64,000 bases of DNA from assembly GCA_973895155.1 (NCBI GenBank), contig OZ316898.1, forward strand, positions 6,683,079 to 6,747,078, given 5' to 3'. Below, one piece after another: positions 15,051-59,654 of the stretch. The notes under the pieces were generated by a model, which saw only the letters and a program-made list of their open reading frames with translations, did no database searches and was not told the DNA's origin. This DNA is from Marsupella aquatica (taxonomy: Eukaryota; Plantae; Marchantiophyta). The position numbers and the translations under genes were made by a program. Every line of letters starts with the position of its first letter. Within the stretch, counting starts at the first letter, position 1.

Positions 15051-18000
15051 TGTATACAAGTGACAACATCTAGTGCCTGCATCTGACCTGAACAAGACAA
15101 GACAACTTATCAGGTAGGCACTGTCGAATGTTCATAGACTATTCTTCGACGCAGCAGAAAGATCTTCTCACACTATTTACTTCAAATTTCATAAAATAGC
15201 TGCACCTGGATTCTACTATTGTCGACAAAATACGACCTACAGTGGGACTCACAGCAAAGTATGAAGGGCTAAGAGGCACCTCGAACGGTACGAAAAGTTA
15301 CACTCGCAGCATTATATTCTTCATTTCCAGCTTCTAAAATAGATTTTGCCATTCCATTCCCTGTCCCTGTAGCAGGAGAAGTCAGTAGTTTGCATCAGTA
15401 CTGGGCAGCAACAACAAGGAGCAAGAGAAATCTATTGCATTTTGCCAACACATTACTAATTCAACAATAGATGAAAAAGTAGAAACGAAAATGGTATCAC
15501 AATCGCACGTAATAGTTCCCAAGATATGTCCAATCGCCTTAGTTTGGGAATCAACGGAATTTAAGATCAATTCAATTTAGATCAAGCAGTTTGGGATTCG
15601 CGAAACACCATTTTCACGACCTACACTCTTACAAAACTCATCCTGAAAAAGGTTCACAAGTGCGAGACTGCATTGAACTGTCTGGGCGAAAGCAGAATCT
15701 AAAGGAAGACCCGAGTGAAGGTGAGTTGCACTCAAGATGATCAAATAGTTGGAGAACTGGAGACAATGGGTCACGTTTACCTGCCAAGTGGAAAGTGCCC
15801 ATTCGTTACTGCCGGAGAAGATCCCTTCTTGGTTGTGACAGGAGCAGTGCAATCGATCTTCCATCATGGCTCAGTCTCTTTATCCTCTGTTAATGAAATC
15901 CTCTCCACAGTTTGCGCCAACTTCGTCAATCTAAAGCAACGAACTCCTATTTGGCATGCCAAACCAATCCAGACGTCTCTAGTGGGGGGCCAGTCAATTC
16001 ACATGGTTCCTAGAAATTATTGCATAATCATTTCCTCTGACCAACTACAAGATTGAGGAAGCTCAATCCCATCACGAATTACGCTGTGTACCGATTGCAA
16101 CCTTCCCAACTCCGATTCTCACAACTTTAACATCAGGACATTCCAATCGAGACTCGCTGGAGCAAGCTACCTTGATTATGGACTGATGGCCGTGGCTTCT
16201 GCACCATACTTCTCCAAGCATTTCTCACAAACCCATAAAACCGAATCAGGCGCTCGTGAGCGTCTACTAGAATCAATCTGAGCACTTGCTTTGAGCACCA
16301 CTCTCCTTAATTTAGTCCCCTTTACAAACTTACCCATCCCAATGTCAACTATCAGATCCTTCACGACACCTTCGGCGATCAATTTCATTGTAACATCTGT
16401 TAGTTTGTCGCTGGTACCTACATTTCCATGACCCTCAGCAATCAGTCTCTCGTTTAGACCTGTTAATTGTTCGGCGGGACCTGGCTTTCCATGATGATCC
16501 TTTTCGTCCTCGTCTTGCAGCATTCTCACGGCCGTATCCCTAGCTCTATCGTGCACCTCCGTGGACGTTGATATGGTTGGAATTGCACCGGCAGTACCCG
16601 GCAGCAAGACCGTAAGTGCGATTTTAGCTACTGTTGTAGCCACAAAATAGGACCATCGCACCCAAGGCTCCACATCCTTCAGCCATTCTTTTACAGCAGT
16701 ACTTTTGCTTAATTTGACTCCTTCTTGATCTTCGACCCAGTGCAAATTGCCGTCATCGAATTGAGACTCGCAGAGGAAGTGCAGTCTGTAGTCTTTTCGA
16801 AAAGGTCCTTTGGCAGTATCTTTGAAGCTTGTCCACAATCCCGAAGAGTCTTTCCGTTTCAGAATCAGGAACCTGGGTACACTTTTCTCTTTCTCTGCTA
16901 TGGAGAACGAGTAGTGCGCTTGAATCCTTAACAAGACTTCATCCCTCCCCTCGTCGGCATTTAACAAAAGCTTTTGGTTTCCTTCATCAAAGTGCTGGCG
17001 TATGGCATAGCCCTCTCTGTACATAACCTCGCCAAGATGTGAACGATTGTCAAAGATAAGATCCTTCACTTCCTGAATTTGAGCAAGTAAAACTTGGTGT
17101 CGATGCTCAACAGATGCTCTCTCCTTGTCCAGAAGTAGTGGATTGGAACTATTCCCTTCCTCTGAATCTTTGATTTGGGGCAATGAATCTTCTTTCCAGT
17201 ACCCGTTAGTATCATCCTGGGTCTCGGCAGCATGCACCGCGTCTTCAACCGCCTCTGAAGACACATCTGGGCTTTCATTTGCCTCAACCCCACCCGGTAT
17301 CACCTCGGAATCTCCCGAACCTTCAGAAAAGTCTGAGTAGTAATAGTAATCTGCCCCTTCACTCTCCCATTCATAGGCATGAGCACCAGGTGTCCCTTCA
17401 TCGGTCCCAGCCTCCATCCCGGCCTTGATCTCGAGAACCTCTTTCAATTCAACATCTGTCAGGAAGGTCTTTAGCTCCACAGCATTCCCACTGACCCGCC
17501 AGCTTGAATATGCTTCGCCTTGCATCACAAGACGCTTGATCTCTAGTAGGGACATCAGCGGCCTTTCAGTCATTTCGGGAGTTTTTTCCGTGGCTCCCCA
17601 CGGCTTAATGACCTGTATATCATATCTTAACCCTGGACAACATGCAACGCAAAGAACCTCCAGTTTCTTCATTATCTCACAAGCACGTTCAACTTGTGAG
17701 AACCTTCCCGTTGTCGGATCCACAGTTTTCACCAGAATGTCTATCCTATCGTCATTGGGATTTGAAGGATTTCCAGCAACCTCTATTAAGAACGAAAGCT
17801 CGCCAGTTTTGAAAGTAGACGAGAATTTTCCTGCTTTGTACCCACTGTCCCCACGACCACCAAAATTGATGTCGTGGGCAAGTTCCACCTGTAATCGGCG
17901 AAACAGAGTCATAGGAATTGCAGTCCTTTCACGATCCTCAGTAGCGAGACACCGCCCAATCACCAAGCCGGATCCTTCATCTTCCCACTCCATTCTGTGA

Positions 18001-21000
18001 TCGTCTTTCTGCGTCAGAGCTGGCACCATGATTTCGTTGTTACCTTTCCTGTAACACAAACCCACTCGTTCCAGCATGGAGATAATATCACCACTTTGAG
18101 TACCTTCGACGAGCAAGTGCCCAAAATAGCCCTCGAATCGGTCTACGGGAATTAATCCATTCATATTCACTATCACAGGGCAACCTTCTTCCAGCATTTC
18201 TTCTGGGAGGAGCAATTCTCCCACAACTCGTCTACAGAACCATTCTGGATGCGGGACCACCACGCTCCTATTGTTGGACCCAGAATCTGTGCATTCTTTT
18301 TGGTCAAAATAGACTATTCCCCCAATCTCATGCAAATACAATGCTGCAACTTTCAAATGCATTACACTTAAACGATGTTCATTGCGCCTCAAATTGACGT
18401 GCTTCTCAAAAGCCTCCCAACTCATAATAGGAAGGTGGCTCTTGGTATCAACTTCTGCCCATCTTTTCAGCTCCTGTTGAAGTTCCAAACAAACTCTTGG
18501 CACCGTGATATTTTGCAGCAGTTTTTGAGCCTGACCAAACAGAAAGCCTTTCAATGGGTAAACCGATGTAGGAAAGCGGACATCCAGTGAAAATGGAGCT
18601 AGACGAATGTGGAGTAAATCCCGAAACTGTTCCTCAAACTTTCTGATCAGGCTCATCCATAGAGTCATAGCAGCCTTTGCGCACTGTTGACCACCAAAGC
18701 AATTTAAAACAATCACCACATGCCGTTTAACATGCTTTTGCGAGCTTGAAGCTATAAACCGAAACCAATAGAGAAGGTCTTTTTCCAAATCTTCCGCAGT
18801 TTTTAGAAAACCAGCTCTGAAGACAAGAACAAAGATAGTTGCTTTCCCGCCCACTAACCCTGAATCAGCAAAGAACGTACCGTGCAGGACACGATATTCC
18901 TCCTGACCTGCCATATCCCAGAGAGTTAGAGTTAAATTCCCCTCCTCAAGTTGGCTTAATTCTATTCCTCTAGTCCGTGCATCCTTCAGTGGACAAGTCT
19001 TCGGTGACAAATGGGTCAGAGCTCTTCTCACTGTAGTTTTTCCTACTTCAGGAAAGCCACAAAGAAATATTTTTGCAGAAGTAAGGGGTACTACATCCTC
19101 AAGTACGTCTTTGTGCTCCTCCTTCAAAGCCCTGAGTCGAATGTTCCGAGCTCTATACTCATCCACCTTTGTCTTCAATGCGGGATCACTCACTTGAATC
19201 CAGTCAATGTCTACTTGCGTTGTGAGGCCTTCATTTGCATAGTAAGATTCTACCATGGCCTGTGCACCTACGTCACCTACTGGAGTCCCAACACAAATGA
19301 GTCTCTCTAAGCGGCAAAGGTGGCCCCTTTGAATGGTCTCCGTCAAACTTTTGAAACCTCCCACATCTATTCCGTTGTTCATTCCCAAATTCAATTCTTG
19401 CAGCTGAGGTAACTTATCTGAGTAGGAGAGGTTTACCAAAGCATCAACCGCCCTATTTGACAGCAGATTGTCACTGAGATCGAGCAATTTCAATGCCACT
19501 GCAGTCCCGGCGCAATTCATTAATACATCTGCCAATGCCCAAACTTGTTCCGAGTTGATAAAACAGCCATCCATGACCAGTTTTACGAAAGAACCTGTCA
19601 AGAGCAATGGGTGCAAATCCTCCAAGCTAATTCGATTCAATGCATTCTGGCTGAGGCGCAGTGATCTAATATTCGGCAGCTTTCCGGATACTATTGCCCG
19701 AGTGAGAACCTTCCAGCCATGGCCATCGTCAAGTACCCCGTTACATAATTGGACCTCCTCCAGTGAGAATCTAGTCCCCGGACCATTAATTATTGCATCC
19801 GCCAAGCCCCAAACTTGCTCTGGGTTGACCCAACAGCCATGCATGACCATGAGGCTCCGATGAAAATCAAACATAAGCAAAGGGCCCACTTCAGCTGATC
19901 CATACTTCCTTACGTGGACAGATGCAATACTGTCCAAGTTTCCAGAATTTATTGCCCGGGTGAAAACCTCCCAGCCATCCACTCCATCAAGCACCCCGCT
20001 CGATAGTTCAAGATGTTGCAAGCTTCTCAAGAACCCACTTTTCAAAGCTGAGTCGAGTTTCTGATATAAAATTCTCCGGGAAAGATCGTCAAGGCCCTCC
20101 ATGCTCAAGATAGAAAATGCGCGCACATGAGATATATGTTTCTCATTCCAGGACCCTAGAACTCCACTGAGATCAAATGCCGACAGGGATATAATAGGCA
20201 CATTGACACCACCGGCGGAGAGGGCCCTTGTAAGCAGGCTTGTGAACTGGCCAGTCATTAACGCTGCTGCTAGACGTGCACTTCCCTCCCGTCCCTGGGC
20301 CAAAACTGCTGGATCCTGAGACCTCAAAGAGGTAATTCTCAATCTTAGCGCCTCTACCGTTGAGATTCTATTGCTTTCGAGGATAGTTTCAAAATGGTCC
20401 ATTCCAGAACTGGCGCCCGATATTAAGCTGAGCTCCACTCCAGGAATGGTGCCAGATCCACTTGCCGGCAGACAGTGTGGGGGATCCCGATGCCAATCTA
20501 CTTCGTGTTCCCTCATATCATTGGATTGGATTCTTTGAACTCTGCACTGCGTTTCCTTTGTCTCTGATAGACGAGTGGCCCCAGTCACCTTGGGAAAACG
20601 GTAAAGCACTTGATACCACTCATCTGGCAGGTTGGCATCATTTCCGGCGTAGAGTCGCACAAAAGCCTCTGTTGCAGGTGCATCACTATCTGGATTTCTC
20701 GTCCAAATCAACACCTTCAAGCTGGGATGGTGGCCCGTTTGAATGGTCTCCATCAAAGTTAGTAGAGTTCCTGAAACTATTCCTGAGTTCATACTCAAAT
20801 CTAAGTCCTGCAACTGAGCCAACTTGTCTGAGCCGGCGAGAGCATGAACCGCGATACCATCGAGCTCATTATTATGGAGATCGAGACGCCTCAACGCTAA
20901 AGGATTCCGAGCGCCTTTCATTATTGCATCTGTAAAGCGCTCAACATCGAACGAATCAATCTTACAACCATGCAGGACGAGGTTCTCAAGGGTACTCGAC

Positions 21001-22442
21001 AAAAGGAAAGGAACCATATCCGCCAACTTAACTCCTACATTCTCACTCAAGCTGAGAGACTTCAGACCTGGCACGTTTCGAACTGTTAAGGATCTAATGA
21101 AAGAACTCCAGCGAGAGGCATTAACGAGGAACCCATCAGATAAACCGAGATGCTCCAACTTTCTAAACAACCCCCGACCCAAAAAGGCGCACAAGATCTG
21201 CAACCCGTTGTGTTGGCGCAAACCCCTTGCGCCCGTGATGGAGAATGATCGCAGTCGAGAACCCCTTGCGCCCGTGATGGAGAATGATATCAGTCGAGAA
21301 GACCTTTGCTCCGAGTCCAACAACGTTTCCATATCAAAGCAGGCGGGGAGTGATAGTGTATGCAGGTCTGGGAATTTCCTGATGCATGAACGTAACGCGG
21401 CTGTTACACCTCGAGCAAACCAACCTACCGGGTAATTGTACTCGGAGGTCATTCTAATTCTCAGTGTCCTTACACCTTGGAATGTACGGTTTTCACGGAA
21501 GATGTCTGGCACTTCATACCCAGTAGAGTCTTCTCCAAGACATGGAAGCTCCAACTCCATGTGTTCCATCCGAGAGAGATCGATACAATCCAAGAGTTCC
21601 ATTATCGAATACCACTGAGTCATATGTAGGGTTTTCTGGATTCTGAAGTGTGAATTTGGATGTCTGAAAGACGTCAGCTCGAAGCGACGAGAGCCGTCCG
21701 GCACTAAAAACCTATCTTCAAGAAAGAAATCAGAAAATTTCTTCCGATAGAAGTCCCAGTCGTCCCATCCTTGTTGGCTCCCAAAGCTCCTCCAATTCGA
21801 ATCTTCAATCCAATAATCCATCGATAAAATTGACTTTGACAAAGATGGATTTGGCTGTCCACTCCTTCTGGAAACAAAGTTGTCGAACCCCGAACTCTAC
21901 AATGCTTGCCGCCGCTCAAGTCAAAAGCTTCTACAATTATCTGGACCCGATTCACTCTCGACTCACCCAGCTAGTACCGCACTGAGACACGAGAACAATC
22001 ACTCAGAATCTCGAAAGGTAGTAAGCAGACGCACCATACCGAGCATCCACAATCAGCTATTTTCCCACTGCATCGTTCCGTAGAAAAGCCTGGAAGTTGC
22101 CAACCGCAAGACCTCTCTTACGACGGCCAGGAGGGGGAAGAAAGGACTAAGATGGCCACGACATTCAGCTAGGAGAAGTGGCTCGTCAGTTCATAATCAA
22201 GGAAGCACTCCCCAAAGCGACTCTCATCAGCAAACACGGAGCTTTTGTTGAAGTCTCTCAGTCCTGCTGCTCGCAGCTTTCCACCCAACTTCACTGGTAT
22301 TCTTTCTACTTTTCGCGAATCGAATGCGGTAGGACCCAACGCGAGCTGTCACACTGTTAATTAATTTCCTCCTGCTGTTCTGCAGCTTCTCTGAAGCTCT
22401 GAAGCTCTGAGCTCCGTGATTTCTCTTCACTCGTGCTGAAGG
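15051..22442 (-). repeat. Left arm of large inverted duplication (Roco gene A with 5' and 3' flanks)
   Basis: Reverse complement of 30292-38210. The 3' flank 15051-16175 is nearly identical to 37081-38210. Confidence 0.95.
16176..21821 (-). CDS. TORNADO1-like LRR-ROC-COR protein, full length (copy A)
   Basis: Uninterrupted ORF; first ATG at 21821 (MDYWIEDSNW). RNI-type LRRs; ROC motifs GFPEVGKTT, RTRGI and WDMAGQEEY; COR (LHEIGGIVYF, PEWFC, LFRRLQV); TRN1-type C-terminus (VPRF..LHFLCE..HWVEDQEG..LRRV..WVC). Confidence 0.92.
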   Translation of the reverse strand: MDYWIEDSNWRSFGSQQGWDDWDFYRKKFSDFFLEDRFLVPDGSRRFELTSFRHPNSHFRIQKTLHMTQWYSIMELLDCIDLSRMEHMELELPCLGEDSTGYEVPDIFRENRTFQGVRTLRIRMTSEYNYPVGWFARGVTAALRSCIRKFPDLHTLSLPACFDMETLLDSEQRSSRLISFSITGARGSRLRSFSITGARGLRQHNGLQILCAFLGRGLFRKLEHLGLSDGFLVNASRWSSFIRSLTVRNVPGLKSLSLSENVGVKLADMVPFLLSSTLENLVLHGCKIDSFDVERFTDAIMKGARNPLALRRLDLHNNELDGIAVHALAGSDKLAQLQDLDLSMNSGIVSGTLLTLMETIQTGHHPSLKVLIWTRNPDSDAPATEAFVRLYAGNDANLPDEWYQVLYRFPKVTGATRLSETKETQCRVQRIQSNDMREHEVDWHRDPPHCLPASGSGTIPGVELSLISGASSGMDHFETILESNRISTVEALRLRITSLRSQDPAVLAQGREGSARLAAALMTGQFTSLLTRALSAGGVNVPIISLSAFDLSGVLGSWNEKHISHVRAFSILSMEGLDDLSRRILYQKLDSALKSGFLRSLQHLELSSGVLDGVDGWEVFTRAINSGNLDSIASVHVRKYGSAEVGPLLMFDFHRSLMVMHGCWVNPEQVWGLADAIINGPGTRFSLEEVQLCNGVLDDGHGWKVLTRAIVSGKLPNIRSLRLSQNALNRISLEDLHPLLLTGSFVKLVMDGCFINSEQVWALADVLMNCAGTAVALKLLDLSDNLLSNRAVDALVNLSYSDKLPQLQELNLGMNNGIDVGGFKSLTETIQRGHLCRLERLICVGTPVGDVGAQAMVESYYANEGLTTQVDIDWIQVSDPALKTKVDEYRARNIRLRALKEEHKDVLEDVVPLTSAKIFLCGFPEVGKTTVRRALTHLSPKTCPLKDARTRGIELSQLEEGNLTLTLWDMAGQEEYRVLHGTFFADSGLVGGKATIFVLVFRAGFLKTAEDLEKDLLYWFRFIASSSQKHVKRHVVIVLNCFGGQQCAKAAMTLWMSLIRKFEEQFRDLLHIRLAPFSLDVRFPTSVYPLKGFLFGQAQKLLQNITVPRVCLELQQELKRWAEVDTKSHLPIMSWEAFEKHVNLRRNEHRLSVMHLKVAALYLHEIGGIVYFDQKECTDSGSNNRSVVVPHPEWFCRRVVGELLLPEEMLEEGCPVIVNMNGLIPVDRFEGYFGHLLVEGTQSGDIISMLERVGLCYRKGNNEIMVPALTQKDDHRMEWEDEGSGLVIGRCLATEDRERTAIPMTLFRRLQVELAHDINFGGRGDSGYKAGKFSSTFKTGELSFLIEVAGNPSNPNDDRIDILVKTVDPTTGRFSQVERACEIMKKLEVLCVACCPGLRYDIQVIKPWGATEKTPEMTERPLMSLLEIKRLVMQGEAYSSWRVSGNAVELKTFLTDVELKEVLEIKAGMEAGTDEGTPGAHAYEWESEGADYYYYSDFSEGSGDSEVIPGGVEANESPDVSSEAVEDAVHAAETQDDTNGYWKEDSLPQIKDSEEGNSSNPLLLDKERASVEHRHQVLLAQIQEVKDLIFDNRSHLGEVMYREGYAIRQHFDEGNQKLLLNADEGRDEVLLRIQAHYSFSIAEKEKSVPRFLILKRKDSSGLWTSFKDTAKGPFRKDYRLHFLCESQFDDGNLHWVEDQEGVKLSKSTAVKEWLKDVEPWVRWSYFVATTVAKIALTVLLPGTAGAIPTISTSTEVHDRARDTAVRMLQDEDEKDHHGKPGPAEQLTGLNERLIAEGHGNVGTSDKLTDVTMKLIAEGVVKDLIVDIGMGKFVKGTKLRRVVLKASAQIDSSRRSRAPDSVLWVCEKCLEKYGAEATAISP

Positions 22443-24219: not shown

Positions 24220-24247
24220 ACAAGACAAGACAAGACAAGACAAGACA
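24220..24247. repeat. (CAAGA)n microsatellite
   Basis: Five full CAAGA units. Confidence 0.85.
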
Positions 24248-29019: not shown

Positions 29020-30178
29020 TGACACAAGAATAACCTGTGCCCAAGATGGGGGACAAATCCAAACGTGTCCACTCCTTCCGGAAACAAGTCTTCGAACGTC
29101 AACTACAATGTTGGATGTCGCTCGATCAAAAGCTTGGACAATCTGCACTCGATTCACTCAAGTCACTGAGAAAGCACCATGACACACGAGAATAATGACT
29201 CAAAATCTCGAAAGCTAGCAAGCAGACACATGAGACACAGCATCCAGAACCACTATCTTACTGCTACGTCTTTCCCTGGAGAAACCTGTAAGTGGCCAAT
29301 CCCAAGAGCTCGATTAAGACGGCCATCAGGCCCGAGAAAGGACTCAGATGGCCACGAAGTCAGCCAGCCGAAGCATCTCTGTTGGTTCCAAACACTCCGG
29401 ACCTACATGCAGTGGAGCAAGAGAGGAAATTTGCTTCAGGTCCTCGATTTGCTGGTACATTTCGACTCAACTTGCGTGGATTCTTTCTAATTTTCTCAAA
29501 ACAGGAGCAGCGCCAATGCCACGATCTTCTCTGGGCATGATGATCGAGACTCCTACATTGTGCCTCCCGCGGCAGAGACCCGAGGGGAGCCGTGAAGTCC
29601 AAGCTCCGTAGTGGAGATATTTTGCCGAGCGTGGCTTCTCTGAGGCGCCGGTAGTTGGGCCGGCTGAAGTCCAAGCTCCGTCAAGGAGTGAAGAACACTC
29701 TGATTCGATTGGCTTCATCATTTTTAGTAATTTAGGAAGATATTTTATCGTTGCATTCGTCGTATGCCGTAGCGTCGTTTAGATCGAGGACAACTCTGTC
29801 GCAGATTTCCCAGACTAGGGGGAGCTCGTTTCCACTACCTTGCAAGCAGTTTCGAGACCTGATTTTGCCTCAAGTCCCTCGGTGTACCCAGCGTGATTTC
29901 GCTATTCTCGATCCACTCGGCTGCCCATTAACCACCGATCCCTCAATGTGGTGCGAGCTTGGAAGCATTTAAAGTAGATTCCACACGGAGGGGCATTTGA
30001 TAGATTCGCTACTTACTATTGGAACTTACGGGGGCTCTGTACAAGAAGCACAGAAGCAGCCTTGTAGACACAAATTCAAGCATGCAAAAAGTGAAACTGA
30101 GCGAGGAAAAAGCAACACCAAATATGTGTGAGCTAGAGGACCCTTTATTGGGCTTCTTTGCCGTTGGGCACTGTGATA

Positions 30179-30262
30179 TATATCCAACACATGGGGATTG
30201 CGTTGTGCTTTCCATCTTTGACATATCCAACACATGGGGATTGCGTTGTGCTTTCCATCTTT
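30179..30262. repeat. ~40-bp tandem duplication in the B/C divergent intergenic region
   Basis: ATATCCAACACATGGGGATTGCGTTGTGCTTTCCATCTTTG occurs twice. Confidence 0.85.
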
Positions 30263-30918
30263 GGTCTGAATCCTATAAAATCCAGTAAGAGCCTTCGGCA
30301 CGAGTGACGAGAAATCACGGAGCTCAGAGCTCATAGCTGAACCTACAGAGCTTCAGAGGAGAAGCTTCAGAGAAGATGCGGAAGGCGATCAATAATAGTG
30401 TGACTACTCTTGTTGGGTCGTAGTTGATTTGGGAAAGTGGAAAGAATCTAGAGAAGTTGGGAGGAAAGCTGCGAGCTGCAGACTGAGAGAGGGCGTCAAT
30501 ACAAGCTCCGTGTTTGCTGATGAGAGTCGCTTTTGGCAGTGAATAGAAACAGAGGAGCCCTTTTCCTGGCTAAATTTCGTGGCCATCTTAGTCCTTTCTT
30601 CCCCCTCATGGCCGTCGTAAGAGAGCTCTAACGGTTGGCAACTTTCACGTTTTTCCACGAAACGATGCAGTGAGAAGATAGCTGATTGTGGATGCTCTGT
30701 CTCGTGTGCGTGCTTACTACCTTTCGAGATTTTGTGTGATTGTTCTCGTGTCTCAATGTGGTACTAGCTGGGTACTTGAGTGAAGCGAGTCCAGATAATT
30801 GTAAAAGCTTTTGCTTGGGCGGCGGCAAGCATTGTAGAGTTCGGGGTTTGACAACTTTGTTTCAAGGAGTGGACAATTTTGAATTTGTGATCTATCTTTG
30901 TCAAAGTCAATTTTATCG

Positions 30919-50241: not shown

Positions 50242-53000
50242 GCACTATTACTAGTCATACGAGATTTGAAGGTGATGTGGGTGTGGAAGTTTAGGTAGAC
50301 GAGTTTATAAATGAAGATTCTGGACAATCATACCAACAAATTTGAGATCCAATTTCCCTCATGATACAATGAACTAAATAGCCACTAAAAATGGTGCTCG
50401 AGATGTTCAGTAGAAATGTTTCTGAGGACTTTCTATGGCTGAATACGAAAGGAAAAATTGAGAGATTGAGGAGGAGCAGCGATCAGGGGCTGCTAACCGA
50501 CGTGCCTGCCCAAATAGTAACAGAAGAGCCAACTCAAATCATGACATCCAAGCGGAAATTCAACTCCATGTGATTCAGTGGGAAAAAAAACATAACATAG
50601 TTGTTTCCATGTAGTAGCAAGTTTTACATTGCAAAACACATAATGTATCATGCAAAAAAATCAACTAGGAGTAAAGACATCTTCAGCATCACACATTGTA
50701 TAACTCATATACCAACATCACACATTGTCCAACACATATCTCACTACTTTTCAATCTCAACATTTATTGAAGCTACAAACACAAAATAGATAGGGGTCCA
50801 CAAACTAATTTCTACTATAGCAAAAGATTCAGTTCTTTTCTTGAGGCGTTGATCTCAATAATTGAGAAGAAATTTTAATGGCAATTGTCAATCCTGGCAC
50901 CATTAGAGTCCCAATTATTTAGAATGTGCAAGAGAATGTGCTAAATTTCTTGTGTTATATATCTTTGCAATATGTGTTATTCATGCTCTGCTAGAAGTGA
51001 ATCAAACAGATCATTCCAGCAAACCCAAATGCACAACTTTTTGTTCAATACAAAGGGTATGAGTTTGCTCTAGTATATCAGATTCTTGTGTTGCATGTAT
51101 ATGTGAGGTTCATGAACCCGTTCATGAACCTTCAGTCAAATCTTGTTCACACTTCTAATTTTTTCTGTTTAAATTTTTACAATAAATCTGTTTTTTTAAT
51201 TTAAGTGTATGTGAGACCCTTTTGACTTGTGACCATAAATAACTAGTATTGATCGTACCATCTTAGTGTCACACACTAGTATTGGGAGTGCAATTTATTG
51301 AAAAACATTTACACAACCTATGTGGACGAGTGAATGTGGGTCCCCACTCCAATTCCAGCTTGATCAGATTGGATGGGCTACCGTAGGACAGGTAATTCAG
51401 TGCCCACTCAATCTCATCTTCAACTTACTACAGATCTCTAGGCTTGAAAACATTCTCACCGAGAATAATATAATCTACATGCACACACCTTAGTTACACT
51501 CTCCAAGATATGCTTTCGACGGGTTGAAGCTGATGGATCAAGTCCAAGTTGTAGGAGCCCAGTGTACCAATGACCTCCAGCTAATTCAAATCTCACTGAA
51601 AATCTACCGTTGACACAACTATTAAGTCTTTCCTAAGTCTACTATATTGATTCGAACAGCTTCAGCTATTAAGCCCTTTCTAGTATAAATACATTATATT
51701 CCCCTGTACTCCCTCATATAGATCTTTTGCATTATTTTACCCACATATCCTCTTATTATTCCCTTAAGGAAATGTTTCCATTCCACATTAAGAAAACACA
51801 AAAGTTCCATGCACCCTAAACCCATACAATTCTATAGTTGCAGGTGTTAAACCCCATCCTTACAAAAGTTGTGCTGCCTCTATTCTAATGCACAATGAAT
51901 TTCAAGGATACCTTATGGGCCAAATATTCCTGACAGCAAATCATAGTTTTCTTGAATAGGGACATAATTTATATTTGCATAATAGGCTGTAAAATAGGTT
52001 CCCAACAGGTTGCAAAATTTCAACAATTCAGTAGTGTATGAAACTCAAAACCTTTTGCACTCATTCCTCTTCCTTGTATTACAAGGCATGCATTGGCAGT
52101 ACTTGTACCGGTTTGGGCAAGATAGAAGGTGACTTTTCAAATTGGATGTCCCTAGCCTGAATGATTCAAAAAACTTGGAAAACTTGTGCTTGGACCAGTA
52201 ACCGTTCTAGCGTTCTAGCCAGAGAGAATGATAGAATGTCCACATTCTGTTTTAGAAAGTTTGTATTAAAACTTGCGCTTGGACCAGAAAGTTAGTTTGA
52301 AGAGAACAACAAGATGAATCTAAATCCAAAGGTAGAGCTGGTCAATTGAAAACAAAACAAAATTGTTCCTGAGTTGTCCAGTCTCCAGTCCAATCTTGAA
52401 TTGCAAGACACTAGACATCAAAACATGTAGAATGAGATTTAATGTGCCAAAACTTGCTACCGTTGGCAAGGTCACATAGTATGTTGCCTTAATGGTCAGT
52501 GCTCCTCGCAACATGCCAATAACTGCAACACTACTTTAAAGTTGATTGTCTTGTTGACTGCCATCTACAATGTTCTGCATTGGATCTAATTGCCATTGGT
52601 CAATCAGCTAAGTATCCCATGAAAGCAAAGTATAGAAGCTATTCCTTGCATGGGATCTCATTTGGGAATGTGATGCATTTGAAAAGCAGAACCACATGAA
52701 ATTCAGAAAATAATTTAGACCAAGCTATTCCATGCCAATGATCAATCATAAGAAACTTGCCCAATGAGACAAATCTCTAAGCCCCAGCTTTGGCCGCTTC
52801 ACACCTAGAATAGATACAATGCTACATGATAGCAACCCTCGTACACCAACATCCACATGCCTCTCACATATGTTGAAATGAAGGAGGTTCTCGAGATCAA
52901 GGCTGGGATGGGGGCCGAGACCAATGAAGGGACAGCTATTGCTCATACCTCTGAATGCGAGATTGAAGGGGCGGAGTACTATTACTACTCAGACCTTTCT

Positions 53001-53251
53001 TGTCTTGAACTGAAATGGGTCCGAAGAACACTTCGTAGTCTCTCTCCACCCCAATAGTGACACTTTCTTTGTAGGGAACCCATTTCAGGGTGAGCCCCCA
53101 CATATCCGAGAGGGACCCGCACCAGGAGGGAGAGAGGATTAAACAGGGCTACAAAATGGCAACCAGGGATCGAGTAGATAATCAGAACTCTCATCCACTA
53201 CCCACACACATATACCTGTGACTTTTCAGTTCCACGCTCATCCTCTAGCCA
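53001..53251 (-). mobile_element. 251-bp non-LTR retroposon-type insertion
   Basis: Flanked by a 14-bp duplication, ACTCAGACCTTTCT (52987-53000) / ACTCAGACTTTTCT (53252-53265). The minus-strand 3' end reads CAAGACA, running into AGA of the target. Confidence 0.7.
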
Positions 53252-53278
53252 ACTCAGACTTTTCTGAATGTTTGGAAG

Positions 53279-53406
53279 CCAGTTTGGACTTGTCTGACAA
53301 ATAAGTGGTCTGGACCCCAACAGATGACATTTGTCACACCCGGTCATCCCGGCCCCGACCTATCTGGGCCCAACCCCGGCCTGGCCGCCCCCCCCTCCTC
53401 CCCCCC

Positions 53407-53437
<31 letters not shown>

Positions 53438-53633
53438 ACACGACCTTACCCAGGGGGGCGGCTTGCTAAACCAGGGAAGTCCAGGACCGGGCCGGGAGGG
53501 GGTCAGGAAAGTTCGGGACCAGGCCGGGAGAGGGTCAGGAAAGTTTGGGACCGGCTGGGGATATCGACAAATATGCAACAAATGACCCCTTTTGGAGCCG
53601 ACAAATGACACGTTGTCGTGTTCAAATGGGGGC
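53279..53633. mobile_element. 355-bp GC-rich MITE-like insertion
   Basis: Flanked by TTGGAAG direct repeats (53272-53278, 53634-53640). Imperfect TIRs (G)CCAGTTTGGAC / GTTCAAATGGGGGC; internal inverted CCGG-rich repeats, poly-C and (CA)n. Confidence 0.65.
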
Positions 53634-56600
53634 TTGGAAGACCCTCACTGGATGGGGTTGAGGCCAGTGAAGACTACATCTTCAGAGGCGGTTGAAGACT
53701 CAGAGCATGCAGCTGCTGAGACAAGTCAAGGATGATATTAATGGGTGCTGGAAGGAAGATTCATTGCCACAAAACAAAGAAGCTCAGGTAGGGAATAGTT
53801 CGCGGAATAGTACCAATCAACTACTTTTGGACAACGAGTGAGCATCCGTTGAGCATCAACACAAATCTCCGCTTGCTCAATTTCAGTGAGTGAAGGATCT
53901 TTGACACTCGCTGACATCTTGTCTACAGAGAGGGCCATGCCACTGGCCAGCAGATTGATGAAGTAACCTGGGATTGGGAATAAATTCCGTTACTCTGCTG
54001 TTCCTGAACTCGGAGGTTGTTAGCCAGTAGTTTAAATCTGTACTGATTAGATTAATTGTGATCCTAGCGAAGAGTTTCAACCAAGCTCAAGTCATGTTAA
54101 ATGCTAACTAAGGGAGGGGGATTTCAGTGAACTACTCATTCTGCTTTTCTCCCGGACAGTTCAATGCAGTCTTGCACTTGTTTACATAAGTTATTCAGCA
54201 TGAGTTGTGCATGAGTGCAATGACCCAGTACGGATCGCTTATCGTGGATGAGGTGTTCAGGGTCGTCTATTGGAGAAGGACTATGCAGAGGAAGAAGTAT
54301 TTGTAAGTTCGTGTTTGACTGGACTGGAGCCAAGCTTGCGACCCCAGCTTGCTAATCTGTATTTGGACCTCGTGATGTGTGTTCAGCAGGTACAATGTGG
54401 GAAGGCCCTTTATTTACTCCTTCAAGTAGGCCGATTGTCCAAATCGCTACTTCTTTTTCTTTGCATTCTTCTTTTCCGTTGCATTACAACAATGTCTTGA
54501 GATTGGGGAAGGTGCTCTAGGGTCATTATTTATCAGAGCGCTGGTACCGGCACAAACGAAAGTTCCTCGTTAGCCTCTAGAAGAAGATGAGCAGTTGGAA
54601 CCCAATTGTGGCCATTTACAGTCTTCTCTTTTGCATGAATGCTCACATTTTTTGGTGTCACAACATGCTGTGTCCATCAGATGAGTATTTGGTGGTGGGC
54701 CATTACTGCGTCAACTTCCGAATTTGCCAAGCACAAGCAATATATGCAGAACACATCAATTCGAAACAAAGCTCCCATAAACTTCAATTTTTCACAAAAT
54801 GTTTGAATGGAACCCAAATTTTAGTGTTTGCTTGCAACCCAAATTGGTAAGCCCTACCCTTCAATTCTTTTGATACTAGAGAATTTGGTTTCCAGGTTGA
54901 ACCGAACCGCGGACTTGAAGTCCACGTCATATAATGTACAAACTTCCTTATTGCCGTCTATTTCAGCGTATTTTGCTGCAGATGGCTTTACAAAGCTTCT
55001 TGGGATATTGTTACTCTGCACCAACCCCACTATAGCTTTCGCATAGGGTCCTGTGTACCTTCGACACACCCTTCATACCTTGGAGTCCACTTCTTTTACT
55101 TCCTTACCGCTTCTCAAGTCAGCATCTGGTCCGCTTCGTTACTTAGACAATGCCTAACAGTCATGGCATAGAAATCTGTCCAAACCAGGTGCTTACAGGA
55201 GTGAACGAAGAAGTACGTCACACTCCCTCCTTGCCTAGCTCCCTCGATTTTAACAGCTACCCTACCCTCGAGTACCGCACCCTGGGAAACGCCTTAAGTA
55301 TTTTGGCTTCCCAGACCAATGCTTGACTTCTCTCGGTCTAAAAGACGTCATTGAGTCAATAATCCAATACGAGCTTCCAATCCACTTTTTGGCTGCTATT
55401 TCTTTTCCCTGAGGGATGGCTCGAAAGGATGTCCTCCCGGTTATCCTTCCCTGGAAACTATGGTTTGATGAAACAGCCTGTATGCCACAATAGTCTAACT
55501 TTGGAAACGCGTTATTTAAAAATTCAATGGAACTTCAGGAGAAAATCCTCACCAAGAGAATTAAGCAGGGTTCATGCTCTAGTAACTCGACAGGCTTGAA
55601 GAAAGATTTACATTTGCGAGAAACCAGAAATCAGTGTACATCGATCTACGGTCCGCGACTTTCTAAGTCCAGAGTAGACCAAGATTGCATCGCTCAGGCA
55701 TCCAATAAATAAGGATGGACAGTCTTCGAACTGAGCCGGCCAGTTTCATAGATTTCATTGAACACTCCATGCGTCTGCAACTCGTCGATATATACTACTT
55801 TCTTTCCCGGACCTTTTCTAAATTCTGAAGCGTACCCCAGCTCCGAAGATAGATCATCCTGAACTTTGTAGACAAACAGATGAAGGACGTCTAGCTTGTT
55901 GCCCCGGATGAAGTTGTATCTTCAAGCAAGGAAACAGTGGCTTTTGGAGAACGAACATCGTCCGCAATGTATCTTGAAAACTTGACAGTCGGGTCATGTC
56001 TTTGCTGGCCAACCATAATAATTGGTGTCACTGACTGCATTCAACTCAGAAATCCAGGAGGTCAATTGCTTCCCTGTAAACCTCAGCAACACCAAATTAA
56101 GATGGAAATAACAACTCATCAATTCATCGATTCCCTTGTTTTGGAGGGTCCTCTAGCTCCGCTTCACTTTCCACATGCACGTACAGTCACGTTTGTCTAC
56201 AAGGCTGCTTCGTAGCTTGTACCGAGTCCTCGAGAGCTATAGTAGTTGGCGAAATCTATCAAATCACAATGTCTGGATACAGTGAGGGACCTCAGCCCAG
56301 ACCCCGACTCGAAACAACCTGCAATTCTAAGGTAGAGGAACGGAGATCTTCTCGTCATCTACAAAGATCCTGCGTTATACGGTACGTGCTGTAGAAAAAT
56401 GGGTAAAATGGGTTTGCGTAGGTACGCAACTACTGCATCTAAATATCCTGAGCTTAAACTCGGGCTTAAACTATTCGACAACTGTGACTCCCATCCAACG
56501 GAGCGCACTGCATCGCACTGATAACTCCGTCACCGCACGAGGAAGATACCTTAGTTTACGGTGAAGGAAAGAACTCTGAGGCTTAGAATTCACAGCTCAA

Positions 56601-57212: not shown

Positions 57213-59654
57213 ATGGATCTCTGGGTCGAAGATTTGAATTGGAGGAAATTTGGGAGCCAACAAAGAGCAGATGACTGGGAGTTTTATCTGGAGAAATATG
57301 GTCAATACTTTTCTCGAGGTATATCTGTAGACTGGGATGCAGGGCCTCTGAAGGATTTGCCTTCTCACAGCCATTCAAATTCACACTTCACAATCATGAA
57401 ATCCCTTGATGCGGATGAGTGGGAGTACATAATGCAGATTTTGGCTCGCATCGATGTCTCTCAAATTGAGCACATGGAGTTGGAGCGTCCCCATGCTCTT
57501 GCAGAGAATAACTTAAGTACGTCGTTCAGGGAAGCCGTCGGAATGGATCGGTTCAGAAGTGTCCTTGGAAGCGGCCGATTCTCAGGGCTCAAGACGCTGA
57601 GAATTAGAGAGACTTCCATAATGAAGTCCGGTTACCAGGTAGATATTTTCCTGGGAAGTGAGGGAAGTGCAGATCTAGCAGAAGCATTGGAATTTGGCCG
57701 GTTTACAAACCTTCTTACACTATCCCTCCCACAATGCGATGTCAAGGCGATTTTAGGGGCCTTGAAGGCCGGACATATTTCTCAACTCCGGTCATTTTCC
57801 ATCAGAATCGACGGATTTAGTGATTTCATTCCTTCATCCAGCGAGAAACGCTATCTTCAACGCAATCTGTCTCAAAATTTGTGGGAAGCTTTTGAAAGCG
57901 GGTGCTTTAAAAGCTTGCAGCATCTCGACTTTTGTGGTCCAGTCCTCCGTAATATAACAAGCTGGAGGGTTTTTATTCGCGCGATGGAGTCTGGGAAGGT
58001 ACCAAATCTAAGATCTCTCAGCTTGAGTAACGATAGTGGATGTAAGCTGGCGGATTTGGTCCCGTTCCTTTTGTCAACGCCTCTTGAGAACCTCATCATG
58101 GATGGCTGTCAGATCAACTCAGTACAAGTTGAGCGCTTCACAAATGTAATAATGACCCTGGGCGCTCGGAGTGCGTTAGCGTTGAAGCGTCTCGATCTGC
58201 ATAATAATATTCTGGATGATAGGGCGGTTCCTGCTTTGGAACGCCTGGCCTACTCAGAGAAGCTGGCTCAGTTGGAGGACTTGGATCTGAGTGGGAACCC
58301 CGGAATGACGTCAAGAGCTCTAATAGCTTTCATGGAGACCATTGAAAGATCCCACCATCCCAGCTTCAAGCTTTTGATTCGCGCGAGAGACCTTCGATTT
58401 GAATCACTTGCAGCACAAGCCATTGTGCGACTCTACGATGAAAACGATGGGCTGGCAGAGGAGTGGTATCAAGTGATTTACCGTTCTCCAAAGGTGACTG
58501 AGCGCATGGACACAAGGGTGACTCAGTACAGTGTTCAAAAGATTCAAGTCAAGGACATGAAGGAGGACAGAGTAGATTGGAATTGGGATCTCCCACACTA
58601 TCTGCCGCCGAGTGGATCGGGCTTCAGGTCCACAATGGAGCATTCTGGAACTATCATTGAAAGAAGTGGATTCTCAACGGTGGAGGCGCTAAGATTGAGA
58701 ATTATCTCTGAGAGGTCCGAGGATCCAGCACCTTTTGGTCTGGGACAGGAGAGAAGAAGTACACATCTCACAGCAGCATTAATGACTGGCCAGCTCACAA
58801 GCTTGCTTACACGATCCCTCCCCGCCGGTGGTGTCAGTTTGCTTACACTATCCCTGCCTATCTGTGATGTCAGTGCAATTTTGGGGGCCTGCATAGAGGG
58901 ACTCGACAATCTTTCTCGGAGCAAACTACATGTTCAGCAACTGGACGTAGTTTCGAAAGGTGAGTGCTTCAAAAGCTTGCAACATCTCGAACTATCTAAC
59001 GGGGTGATTGATGGACTCGATGGCTGGGATATTTTCACTCGGGCAATACATTCTGGAAGCTTGCAGCATATTACATCACTGCGCCTCAGCCAGAATGCCT
59101 TGAATCGAATTAACTTGGAGACTTTGGTCCCCTTGATTTTGTCGAATTCGCTTGTAAACCTCGCCATGGATAGCTGTCGGATCAACTCACACCAGATTTG
59201 GGGCTTGGCAGATTCATTGGTCATGAATGGCCGCGAGACTGGATTGGCATTGAAGTGGCTAGATCTCTATGACAATCTGTTGGGGAAAACGGCAGTTGAC
59301 GCTGTGGTAAATCTAGCTGACTCATATTTGTTGCCTCATTTGCAAGTATTGAATTTGGGAAGGAACGTGGGAGTAAGTCTGAGAGATTTCAGGAGCTTGA
59401 CGGAGACCATTGGAAGGGGCCGTCTTCCCAGCTTGGAGACTCTCATTTGGGTAGGAAATCCAGTAGATGACATCGCTGCAGAGGCCATTGTAAGGGCGTA
59501 CGATGAAAATGAAGACCTCACAACGACATTTGATATTACTTGGAATCAAGTGAGAGATCCTGCATTGAAGACGACGGTGAATGAGTACAGGGCTCAGAAC
59601 ATTCGACTCAGGAGAAGCTACATGATTGACAACAGCTCCGACATATCAATGTAG
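57213..59654 (+). CDS. LRR-only TORNADO1-like protein, truncated before ROC (copy D; gene or recent pseudogene)
   Basis: First ATG at 57213 (MDLWVEDLNW). Colinear with the copy B LRR region up to NIRLR (about 59612), then 13 unrelated codons and a stop. Upstream 56650-57210 is homologous to the copy B upstream region. Confidence 0.8.
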   Translation: MDLWVEDLNWRKFGSQQRADDWEFYLEKYGQYFSRGISVDWDAGPLKDLPSHSHSNSHFTIMKSLDADEWEYIMQILARIDVSQIEHMELERPHALAENNLSTSFREAVGMDRFRSVLGSGRFSGLKTLRIRETSIMKSGYQVDIFLGSEGSADLAEALEFGRFTNLLTLSLPQCDVKAILGALKAGHISQLRSFSIRIDGFSDFIPSSSEKRYLQRNLSQNLWEAFESGCFKSLQHLDFCGPVLRNITSWRVFIRAMESGKVPNLRSLSLSNDSGCKLADLVPFLLSTPLENLIMDGCQINSVQVERFTNVIMTLGARSALALKRLDLHNNILDDRAVPALERLAYSEKLAQLEDLDLSGNPGMTSRALIAFMETIERSHHPSFKLLIRARDLRFESLAAQAIVRLYDENDGLAEEWYQVIYRSPKVTERMDTRVTQYSVQKIQVKDMKEDRVDWNWDLPHYLPPSGSGFRSTMEHSGTIIERSGFSTVEALRLRIISERSEDPAPFGLGQERRSTHLTAALMTGQLTSLLTRSLPAGGVSLLTLSLPICDVSAILGACIEGLDNLSRSKLHVQQLDVVSKGECFKSLQHLELSNGVIDGLDGWDIFTRAIHSGSLQHITSLRLSQNALNRINLETLVPLILSNSLVNLAMDSCRINSHQIWGLADSLVMNGRETGLALKWLDLYDNLLGKTAVDAVVNLADSYLLPHLQVLNLGRNVGVSLRDFRSLTETIGRGRLPSLETLIWVGNPVDDIAAEAIVRAYDENEDLTTTFDITWNQVRDPALKTTVNEYRAQNIRLRRSYMIDNSSDISM

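What the first reader, a model, noticed from the sequence alone, without database searches (positions are those of the whole stretch)
15051..59654. TORNADO1-like Roco (LRR-ROC-COR) gene cluster evolving like an NLR immune-receptor locus
Seen: five paralogues in 45 kb with intron-free coding regions, in two subtypes (A/C and B/D, distinguishable in both N-terminus and upstream DNA). They show full-length, C-terminally truncated, LRR-only and pseudogene states, LRR module copy-number change, mosaic sequence and TE-rich spacers. Known: Arabidopsis TRN1 is a developmental gene; Roco proteins are LRR-GTPases that dimerise through COR; diversifying LRR-Roco genes were proposed as immune receptors in the brown alga Ectocarpus; birth-and-death clusters typify NLRs. 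Inference: this is a non-NLR, GTPase-switch family of intracellular recognition receptors in a bryophyte-type plant, with the LRR as sensor and the TRN1 C-terminal domain as output.
Basis: partly seen in the sequence, partly recalled or inferred. Interest (0 to 1): 0.88.

Follow-up and report, generated by a model that had tools for sequence, protein, structure and literature searches.

The report
Fast-evolving TORNADO1-like Roco gene cluster
A liverwort genome carries a 46-kb cluster of five copies of a large LRR-GTPase gene related to the plant developmental gene TORNADO1; the copies are duplicated, recombined, truncated and lost the way immune-receptor genes are, but nothing here shows that they work in immunity.

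Summary
Window 15051-61023 has three intact intron-free LRR-Roc-COR ORFs: A (1881 aa), B (1484 aa) and C (2053 aa). It also has an LRR-only ORF (E, 813 aa) followed by a decayed Roc remnant, and a short fragment pseudogene. A and C are arms of an inverted duplication around B. C holds two extra 258-bp three-LRR modules made by unequal crossing-over. The quartet topology switches within the LRR, so the copies are mosaics. "TE-rich spacers" was not supported.

The genes are not TRN1 orthologues. They sit in a liverwort-only sister clade of canonical TRN1, yet A and C keep TRN1's C-terminal domain (hhalign 99.8%). Calypogeia fissa has comparable clusters with intact, truncated, frameshifted and decayed copies.

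The immune-receptor reading is only partly supported. Omega is about 0.3-0.4 in Roc-COR and 0.26 at LRR scaffold positions. It is 0.58 on the concave strand face, 0.93 in the beta-alpha loops and 1.4 (borderline) at the A/C N-terminus. The concave face is less variable than the rest, unlike in NLRs. The guanine-specifying G4 aspartate is lost. No RNA data exist.

The same scan noted a second such array about 3 Mb away. I found no paper describing this expansion.

The parts
15051..16178 (-). 3' flank of gene A. It is the outer part of the inverted duplication shared with C (partner 37078-38210).
   Evidence: 96% identity over 1133 bp; inverted-repeat arms I2 and I6 at 95-97%.
16176..21821 (-). 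Gene A, a full-length intron-free ORF of 1881 aa from its first Met. Order of parts: N-terminal motif, LRR solenoid 1 (aa 58-395), disordered linker, LRR solenoid 2 (aa 490-875), Roc, COR, acidic linker, TRN1-type C-terminal domain (aa ~1560-1881).
   Evidence: ORF. Pfam Roc 33.2 bits against cutoff 27, COR-A E=2.8e-4, LRR. AlphaFold model of aa 1-910 with ribonuclease-inhibitor-like matches, E=3e-9. C-terminal domain hhalign 99.8% to the TRN1 clade.
21822..22442 (-). Upstream region of A, shared with the upstream region of C. The proximal ~300 bp are shared by all four genes.
   Evidence: 80% over 652 bp with C; 71-74% over 250-320 bp with B and E.
24565..29019 (-). Gene B, an intact ORF of 1484 aa: LRR-Roc-COR without the TRN1 C-terminal domain. 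It ends in the acidic linker.
   Evidence: Only a faint out-of-frame continuation at 24485-24565. Roc-COR omega against A is 0.32.
29020..30918 (.). 1.9-kb spacer between the divergently oriented genes B and C. The boundary of the A/C duplication lies at 30292.
   Evidence: Contigs of public runs break at 30292 and 30331 (table 7).
30919..37080 (+). Gene C, a full-length intron-free ORF of 2053 aa. It has the architecture of A plus two extra 86-aa LRR modules.
   Evidence: Roc 42.8 bits.
32764..33540 (+). Tandem array of three 258-bp (86-aa, three-LRR) modules inside C. The middle module combines the 5' half of module 3 with the 3' half of module 1.
   Evidence: TRF period 258, 3.2 copies, 91% matches. 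Repeat family D3. Block pattern of differences between the modules.
37081..38210 (+). 3' flank of C, partner of 15051-16178.
52863..53962 (+). Fragment pseudogene of the A/C type. It covers the COR end, the linker and the start of the C-terminal domain (A aa ~1454-1613). It lies in three frames and is interrupted by ~680 bp that hold a poly-C run and 32-bp repeats.
   Evidence: tblastn 52-77% identity in frames 3, 1 and 2. TRF rows at 53388-53559.
57213..59654 (+). Gene E, an LRR-only ORF of 813 aa of the B subtype. It ends 13 codons after the last LRR-domain residues.
   Evidence: Omega against B is 0.44-0.66. An open frame is very unlikely under neutrality (P<0.006 at 0.05 substitutions per site).
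60385..61023 (+). Decayed Roc remnant belonging to E. The P-loop lysine is replaced, the frame is broken, and about 11% of alignment columns are gaps. It is separated from the ORF by a ~770-bp insert. No COR or C-terminal domain follows.
   Evidence: tblastn 31-37% identity in two frames. Sequence read directly. Nucleotide alignment.

Best explanation
This is a lineage-specific array of paralogues of the plant Roco gene TORNADO1 in a (probably leafy) liverwort. It belongs to a liverwort-only sister clade of canonical TRN1.

Shown. An inverted duplication (A and C) flanks B. Copies are remodelled by unequal crossing-over of a three-LRR module, and by gene conversion between copies. They also lose domains step by step: first the TRN1 C-terminal domain, then Roc-COR, then everything. 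Selection still acts. LRR scaffold residues, Roc-COR and the C-terminal domain are under purifying selection. The non-scaffold LRR surface, above all the beta-alpha loops and the N-terminal solenoid, evolves close to the neutral rate. The LRR-only ORF has stayed open while its own Roc decayed.

Inferred. The proteins are nucleotide-gated LRR binding modules. Two ribonuclease-inhibitor-like solenoids bind partners. Roc-COR acts as a dimerising switch, by analogy with other Roco proteins, although it may no longer be guanine-specific. A long helix plus a small Cys/His-bearing domain couples to downstream partners. The binding partners change quickly. Whether those partners come from pathogens is open.
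For: Architecture: Pfam Roc above its cutoff in A, B and C, with COR-A and LRR hits. Two RI-like solenoids are predicted.

TRN1 link: an Ipomoea protein named TORNADO 1 matches at E=2e-23. The C-terminal domains match at hhalign probability 99.8%, E=3e-28.

Phylogeny: A+C (95), then B (86), lie inside a 7-row clade with Calypogeia (100). That clade lies inside a 31-row clade (99) whose named members are all liverworts. A separate 39-row clade (100) holds canonical TRN1 and Chara.

Dynamics. Calypogeia loci hold intact, truncated, frameshifted, stop-split and decayed copies side by side.

Selection: Roc-COR omega 0.31-0.41; C-terminal domain 0.36; scaffold 0.26; strand face 0.58; beta-alpha loops 0.93; helices and rest 0.77. 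Retention of the E ORF against its decayed Roc is shown.
Against: No expression data exist for these genes, so activity is inferred only from open frames and omega. Near-neutral omega over much of the LRR, frequent pseudogenes and the lost G4 aspartate also fit a family that is partly decaying. COR-A scores stay below Pfam's gathering cutoff (21-28 against 35.3 bits). The fold of the C-terminal core could not be assigned. Selection estimates rest on four to seven sequences, Nei-Gojobori counts, and an LRR register taken from a model with mean pLDDT 70.
Confidence: 0.75

Rival explanations
1. One reading: a dedicated non-NLR family of intracellular immune receptors. The LRR senses pathogen molecules, Roc-COR is the switch, and the TRN1 C-terminal domain triggers defence or cell death.
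For: NLR-like locus behaviour: tandem and inverted copies, module copy-number change, conversion mosaics, truncated and LRR-only derivatives, pseudogenes. The pattern recurs in Calypogeia. The family is expanded in leafy liverworts against three genes found in Marchantia polymorpha. The A/C N-terminal 300 columns have omega 1.43 (CI 1.00-2.11). A converted tract has 16 non-synonymous and 0 synonymous differences (p=0.013, window chosen after the fact). The most variable positions are the beta-alpha loops, which are contact sites in ribonuclease-inhibitor complexes (the contact role is from general knowledge). There is a precedent in brown algae (PMC11378527).
Against: The concave strand face is less variable than the rest of the LRR (Fisher p between 0.0002 and 0.02 in five of six pairs, in the opposite direction to NLRs). 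No site class has omega significantly above 1. There is no STAND ATPase. The G4 aspartate is lost. There are no expression, infection or population data. The only studied relative, TRN1, is described as developmental (PMC11378527, PMC4104024).
Confidence: 0.22
2. Neutral birth-and-death of redundant duplicates. A housekeeping or developmental TRN1-like gene was amplified by a recombination-prone inverted and tandem structure. The extra copies drift under relaxed constraint toward pseudogenes and have no recognition function.
For: Omega is 0.6-0.9 over most non-scaffold LRR positions, and about 1 in linkers. Two of five units here are broken or fragmentary, and more than half of the Calypogeia copies examined are broken. 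The G4 aspartate is lost in all three Roc-bearing copies. No transcription evidence exists.
Against: ORFs of 1484-2053 codons stay open at dS 0.2-0.5. Scaffold omega is 0.26, Roc-COR 0.31-0.41 and the C-terminal domain 0.36, each with a confidence interval below 1. The 813-codon LRR-only frame is intact beside an indel-ridden Roc remnant. The first 28 residues are conserved across both species.
Confidence: 0.2
3. Artefact: contaminant DNA, mis-assembly of a single gene into several copies, or a gene carried by a transposon.
For: Short-read contigs of public runs break at the duplication boundaries and show paralogue cross-mapping.
Against: The copies differ by 20-55% at protein level, and each has its own flanks. 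Four runs from two studies hold the stretch. The closest relatives lie on 24-41 Mb liverwort contigs. No transposon protein domain or terminal repeat surrounds the genes.
Confidence: 0.02

Closest known systems
TORNADO1 (TRN1/LOPPED1) of Arabidopsis and its orthologues across streptophytes
   Same: Ribonuclease-inhibitor-like LRR, then Roc, then COR, then the same C-terminal domain. That domain shares a conserved Cys-Glu, a His, and a terminal Trp-x-Cys-x-x-Cys/His. The ORFs in the window are uninterrupted.
   Different: The window genes belong to a separate, liverwort-only clade. They carry an extra N-terminal LRR solenoid of ~470 aa with its own conserved 28-residue start. The TRN1-clade G4 motif (Thr-His-x-Asp type) is replaced by Asn-Cys-Phe-Gly/Ser. 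They are multi-copy and fast-evolving, whereas the literature speaks of one or two ROCO genes per plant (PMC11378527).
LRR-ROCO genes of brown algae (Ectocarpus and relatives), proposed immune receptors
   Same: An LRR-Roc-COR family expanded in one lineage, with variable LRR number and a proposed receptor role (PMC11378527).
   Different: Brown algae diversify by shuffling single-LRR exons and by alternative splicing. Here the genes have no introns in the ORF. LRR number changes by unequal crossing-over of a 258-bp three-LRR module, and copies exchange sequence by gene conversion. The brown-algal proteins were not compared directly here.
NLR resistance-gene clusters of plants
   Same: Tandem and inverted paralogues, birth-and-death, conversion mosaics, truncated and LRR-only derivatives, LRR repeat-number change.
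   Different: No NB-ARC or other STAND ATPase is present. The LRR lies N-terminal to the switch. The concave LRR face is not hypervariable, and omega is below 1 there.
MFHAS1/MASL1 and prokaryotic Roco proteins (e.g. Chlorobium tepidum Roco)
   Same: The simplest Roco layout, with LRR preceding Roc-COR (PMC4104024). A dimerising G-domain switch is expected.
   Different: A doubled RI-type LRR, a plant-specific C-terminal domain, and a divergent G4. Biochemistry was not tested.

Membership tests
Roco proteins (Roc-COR GTPases) | Roc G domain | tested here: met
   PF08477 at 33.2, 39.4 and 42.8 bits in A, B and C against cutoff 27. Absent from E except for a decayed remnant.
Roco proteins (Roc-COR GTPases) | COR domain directly after Roc | tested here: met
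   PF16095 COR-A E=2e-6 to 3e-4 at the expected place, but below the gathering cutoff (21-28 against 35.3 bits). Collinear homology over ~570 aa to proteins that UniRef names COR-domain proteins, and to TRN1.
Roco proteins (Roc-COR GTPases) | Intact nucleotide-binding motifs G1, G3 and G4 | tested here: not met
   G1 (Gly-x4-Gly-Lys-Thr) and G3 (Asp-x-Ala-Gly-Gln) are intact in A, B and C. The G4 aspartate is replaced by Gly (A, C) or Ser (B). It is kept in two Calypogeia relatives and in the TRN1 clade.
Roco proteins (Roc-COR GTPases) | GTP binding and hydrolysis, and COR-mediated dimerisation | not testable with these tools
   Needs purified protein. No complex prediction was run, because two Roc-COR copies exceed the size limit.
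TORNADO1 family | Ribonuclease-inhibitor-type LRR N-terminal to Roc | tested here: met
   AlphaFold model of A aa 1-910, mean pLDDT 70. Best PDB matches are ribonuclease inhibitors (E=3e-9) and NLRP LRRs.
TORNADO1 family | TRN1-type C-terminal domain | tested here: met
   For A and C: hhalign of the liverwort-clade profile against the TRN1-clade profile gives probability 99.8%, E=3e-28 over 216 columns. Iterated HMM search reaches Ipomoea TRN1 residues 1100-1368. B and E lack the domain.
TORNADO1 family | Orthology to TRN1 (placement inside the clade that holds angiosperm TRN1) | tested here: not met
   The Roc-COR tree puts the window genes in a 31-row liverwort clade (99). The TRN1 clade is a separate 39-row group (100) that has its own liverwort members from Riccia. 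This was a quick LG+G4 search with midpoint rooting only.
TORNADO1 family | Developmental patterning role together with the tetraspanin TRN2 | not testable with these tools
   Known only from Arabidopsis genetics, as cited in PMC4104024 and PMC11378527.
NLR-type immune receptor loci | Central STAND NTPase (NB-ARC or NACHT) | tested here: not met
   No such Pfam hit. The switch is a Ras-like Roc domain.
NLR-type immune receptor loci | Clustered paralogues with birth-and-death and sequence exchange | tested here: met
   Also seen in Calypogeia.
NLR-type immune receptor loci | Diversifying selection focused on solvent-exposed xxLxLxx residues of the LRR | tested here: not met
   Strand-face omega 0.58 (0.41-0.83). 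These positions are less variable than the rest of the LRR. Beta-alpha loops have omega 0.93 (0.73-1.21), not above 1.
NLR-type immune receptor loci | Presence/absence and allelic diversity among accessions; induction by pathogens; cell-death output | tested here: inconclusive
   Four runs from two coded organisms all hold 28001-34000. They are short contigs with paralogue cross-mapping, and none is RNA. Induction and cell death are not testable here.
Brown-algal LRR-ROCO candidate receptors | LRR diversity generated by exon shuffling and alternative splicing | tested here: not met
   The ORFs are uninterrupted. LRR number changes through a 258-bp tandem module. The feature is described in PMC11378527.

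The most novel reading that the evidence does not exclude
Leafy liverworts may have built a second intracellular recognition system on a Roco (Ras-like) switch instead of a STAND ATPase, in parallel with brown algae. In this reading a doubled ribonuclease-inhibitor-type LRR is the variable sensor and the TRN1 C-terminal domain is the output. Truncated LRR-Roc-COR and LRR-only derivatives, which arose independently in two species, would act as helpers, decoys or regulators.
Probability: 0.2. Interest if true: 0.85.

Novelty: new variant of a known kind. Interest (0 to 1): 0.55.

Why it matters
Papers held here describe plant Roco genes as one or two per genome and poorly understood, known only through the developmental gene TRN1 (PMC11378527, PMC4104024).

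This locus, a second array noted in the same genome, and the Calypogeia clusters point to something different. One plant lineage has turned a TRN1 paralogue into a multi-copy, recombining, fast-turnover family with modular domain loss.

That gives a concrete, testable candidate for non-NLR intracellular receptors in bryophytes.

It also gives natural domain-deletion series (full length, no C-terminal domain, LRR only) and a natural G4 variant. These could help work out what the uncharacterised TRN1 C-terminal domain and the Roc switch do. Marchantia polymorpha has only three genes of the clade, so a genetic test is feasible there.

Tried and rejected
Fold of the C-terminal domain. The model has pLDDT 73. 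Foldseek against the PDB gave nothing at E<=0.001. VIA-align wide gave only generic long-helix matches (Z about 7) to residues 18-107, so the core was effectively untested. The ESM Atlas gave nothing above 0.9. No fold is assigned; this is not evidence of a new fold.

Expression. The look-up of sequencing runs listed no RNA run.

Accession comparison. Read laying on 28001-34000 (6000 letters, four runs) returned only short contigs. The differences are largely explained by paralogue cross-mapping, and the low-support joints have sides of 20-26 letters. I draw no presence/absence or haplotype conclusion.

Transposons in the spacers. Twenty spacer ORFs had no Pfam transposon hit, and repeat search found almost nothing outside the genes.

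Tree. The mixture-model tree did not finish in two attempts, so an LG+G4 quick tree was used.

Protein searches. A word-indexed search from a Calypogeia relative did not reach angiosperm TRN1. The exhaustive HMMER search did.

Literature. Searches for liverwort or bryophyte Roco expansions, and for the three Marchantia gene identifiers, found nothing. Cnops et al. 2006 is not held.

Other points. The 16:0 non-synonymous excess in the converted A/C tract is nominally significant but the window was chosen after the fact. Widened to columns 301-720 it is 25:5, which is not significant. No spliced gene model was used, and no joined-exon search was needed.

Full report
WHAT IS THERE

The window holds three very long uninterrupted ORFs: 16176-21842(-), 24565-29157(-) and 30898-37080(+). 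A fourth ORF of 828 codons lies at 57168-59654(+). Counted from the first Met they encode 1881 (A), 1484 (B), 2053 (C) and 813 (E) residues.

Pfam finds Roc above its gathering score in A, B and C (33-43 bits against 27). COR-A sits at the expected place (E 2e-6 to 3e-4, below the curated cutoff), and LRR families cover the N-terminal half. E has LRR hits only.

tblastn of these proteins against the window finds two more pieces:
- A 1.1-kb fragment at 52863-53962(+), in three frames, matches A residues ~1454-1613.
- A Roc remnant at about 60385-61023(+) lies behind E, in two frames, at 31-37% identity.

Read directly, E's frame leaves the family alignment right after the last LRR-domain residues and stops 13 codons later. 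About 770 bp of unrelated DNA follow. Then comes a P-loop remnant in which the lysine is replaced.

B stops in the acidic linker after COR. Only ~27 residues of faint out-of-frame similarity follow.

ARRANGEMENT AND SEQUENCE EXCHANGE

A and C are arms of an inverted duplication with B between them.
- Their 3' flanks are 96% identical over 1133 bp (15051-16178 against 37078-38210).
- Their upstream regions are 80% identical over 650 bp.
- All four genes share about 300 bp upstream at 70-74%.
Public short-read contigs break at its inner boundary, 30292.

Inside the arms, identity is uneven. There are 95% tracts at 19719-21268/31475-33024 and at 15689-17096/36160-37567. Roc-COR is 82-88% identical, and the first ~250 residues are only 35-61% identical at protein level.

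In alignment columns 421-720, dS between A and C is zero. That marks recent gene conversion.

C contains 3.2 copies of a 258-bp unit (32765-33581), each encoding three LRRs. That is two units more than in A. The middle unit equals unit 3 in its first 48 codons and unit 1 in codons 53-83, which is the signature of unequal crossing-over.

Quartet-informative nucleotide sites support AC|BE throughout columns 1-1020. In the last ~120 LRR codons they support AB|CE (16 against 5 sites), so exchange also crossed the two subtypes.

TRANSPOSONS IN THE SPACERS

I could not support "TE-rich spacers". Twenty spacer ORFs of 90 aa or more have no transposon domain. Apart from one 134-bp pair, the spacers hold no dispersed repeats within the window.

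PROTEIN ANATOMY

An AlphaFold model of A residues 1-910 (11-sequence alignment, mean pLDDT 70) shows two strand-helix solenoids. The first has about 11 repeats at residues 58-395, and the second about 13 repeats at 490-875. A disordered stretch joins them. The best PDB matches are ribonuclease inhibitors (E=3e-9) and NLRP LRRs.

Relatives such as Marchantia Mp2g10020 align only to the second solenoid. The first ~470 residues are therefore an extension of this subclade. The extension begins with a 28-residue Trp/Asp-rich motif, found only in the window genes and three Calypogeia proteins.

In Roc, G1 and G3 are intact. The G4 aspartate contacts the guanine base in Ras-like GTPases (general knowledge). 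It is replaced by Gly in A and C and by Ser in B. Two Calypogeia relatives keep it, and the TRN1 clade has a Thr-His-x-Asp-type motif.

The last ~320 residues of A and C were modelled with a 54-sequence alignment (pLDDT 73). The model has an 85-residue helix, a small strand-containing core, a hydrophobic helix and a C-terminal hairpin. Invariant residues include a Cys-Glu pair, a His and a terminal Cys next to a conserved Trp. I read this as a likely zinc site; that is inference. No solved fold could be assigned.

RELATION TO TRN1

An exhaustive HMMER search with Roc-COR plus the C-terminus of A found only 288 representatives at E<=1e-3 among 1.84 billion, and 30 at E<=1e-30. Named hits include "protein TORNADO 1 [Ipomoea batatas]" (E=2e-23), plus proteins of mosses, ferns, Chara and liverworts.

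The C-terminal domain is homologous to that of TRN1. An iterated search reaches Ipomoea TRN1 residues 1100-1368. An independent profile-profile comparison of the liverwort-clade and TRN1-clade alignments gives probability 99.8%, E=3e-28, over 216 columns.

In a Roc-COR tree of 103 rows:
- A and C are sisters (95) and B joins them (86).
- Together with four Calypogeia fissa proteins they form a clade (100).
- That clade lies inside a 31-row clade (99) whose named members are all liverworts: Calypogeia, three Marchantia polymorpha genes, M. paleacea and Riccia.
- Canonical TRN1 forms a separate 39-row clade (100). It includes Chara and its own Riccia members.

The window genes are therefore TRN1-like paralogues, not orthologues. 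The best database identity is 65%, to Calypogeia. Other agents of this scan also took this genome for a liverwort.

THE SAME DYNAMICS IN ANOTHER SPECIES

In the Calypogeia fissa assembly the relatives are also clustered.
- One locus has an intact intron-free ORF of 1869 codons (L001).
- About 80 kb away on the same contig, L002 holds a copy split by a frameshift, next to a frame-broken partial copy.
- A second contig has an intact ORF of 1546 codons that ends in the same acidic linker as B. In the tree this copy is sister to a full-length copy, so the truncation is independent (L004).
- Beside it (L003) lies a copy that the assembly's annotation splits into two genes (P0170 and P0024), although the window protein A aligns across the gap in one frame. 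I take this for an in-frame stop; the stop codon itself was not read. A decayed copy follows it.
- A fifth copy is split after COR (L005).

Some of the breaks could be assembly errors. An earlier first-reader note reports a second such array 3.04 Mb from this window in the same genome. I could not check it.

SELECTION

All values are Nei-Gojobori estimates with bootstrap intervals.

| Comparison | Omega |
|---|---|
| Roc-COR, A-C | 0.40 |
| Roc-COR, A-B | 0.32 |
| Roc-COR, B-C | 0.31 |
| C-terminal domain, A-C | 0.36 |
| Linkers | about 0.7-1 |
| B-E, along the LRR | 0.44-0.66 |
| A-C, first 300 columns | 1.43 (1.00-2.11; binomial p=0.06) |

The converted A/C tract has 16 non-synonymous and 0 synonymous differences (p=0.013). 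That window was chosen after the fact. Widened to columns 301-720 the count is 25:5, which is not significant.

I took the LRR register from the modelled strands. Concave xxLxLxx positions differ at 16-38% of residues against 27-51% for the remaining LRR positions. The difference is significant in five of six pairs, in the direction opposite to NLRs. Eight sequences from two species give the same ranking, with a variability peak at offsets +7 to +12, the beta-alpha loops.

Pooled over three phylogenetically independent pairs (A-C, B-E, and two Calypogeia genes), omega by site class is:

| Site class | Omega (95% interval) |
|---|---|
| Scaffold | 0.26 (0.17-0.38) |
| Strand face | 0.58 (0.41-0.83) |
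| Beta-alpha loops | 0.93 (0.73-1.21) |
| Helices and rest | 0.77 (0.63-0.96) |

The family is thus constrained in its fold and switch, and close to neutral on much of its LRR surface. Diversifying selection is not demonstrated.

E looks maintained by selection. Its 813-codon frame is open, whereas a neutral sequence would keep such a frame with P<0.006 after 0.05 substitutions per site. In contrast, its own Roc remnant has gaps in 11% of alignment columns and a broken frame.

EXPRESSION AND POPULATIONS

No RNA run holds the locus. Four runs, from two coded organisms and two studies, hold 28001-34000 as short contigs at 95% identity or more. The differences are confounded by paralogue cross-mapping. 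I use them only as evidence that the locus exists outside this assembly.

LITERATURE

[quoted passage not shown] An older review even says that only flowering plants have them (PMC4104024). Searches for Roco expansions in bryophytes, and for the Marchantia gene identifiers, found nothing.

VERDICT

Only the transposon-richness of the spacers is unsupported.

It is extended here by the clade placement, the doubled LRR, the lost G4 aspartate and the parallel in Calypogeia.

The functional half, immune receptors, remains a hypothesis. The one sequence-level prediction I could test, a hypervariable concave LRR face, failed.

Noticed in passing
window 45368-46609 (-), with tandem 26- and 41-bp repeats at 45139-45370: Intact 413-aa ORF with an F-box-protein-type Kelch beta-propeller hit (PF24750, E=6e-6), in the spacer between C and the fragment pseudogene. 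Short tandem repeats abut its 3' end.
   Followed up: partly
window 62228-62902 (-): A 224-aa ORF with the HscB C-terminal oligomerisation domain (E=5e-19) and a weak DnaJ hit. It is probably an exon of the iron-sulfur co-chaperone gene that borders the cluster.
   Followed up: partly
window 3831-5535 and 8517-9233: Two non-coding tandem arrays: about seven copies of a ~250-257-bp unit (75-93% identity) and four copies of a ~180-bp unit. No ORF of 90 aa or more overlaps them.
   Followed up: no
window 422-2014 (-): A 530-aa ORF with no Pfam match. Nature unknown.
   Followed up: partly
window 59655-60384: About 770 bp of unrelated DNA inserted exactly at the LRR/Roc junction of gene E. It has no ORF, no repeat partner in the window and no convincing splice signals. 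Origin unknown.
   Followed up: partly
L002:1117-5850 and L004:22433-24641 (Calypogeia fissa): A diacylglycerol-kinase-type gene (DAGK_cat) lies next to the Roco clusters on two different Calypogeia contigs. This suggests that the clusters are segmental or homeologous duplicates.
   Followed up: no
L001:10001-15610 (Calypogeia fissa): The deposited 1952-aa model (P0002) is spliced, but the locus holds a single open frame of 1869 codons that is collinear with window gene A. The annotated extra 3' exons are probably an annotation artefact.
   Followed up: partly
window 12129-12262 and 38449-38582: A 134-bp inverted pair, 90% complementary. It is the only dispersed repeat found outside the Roco genes and may be a small non-autonomous element.
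   Followed up: no
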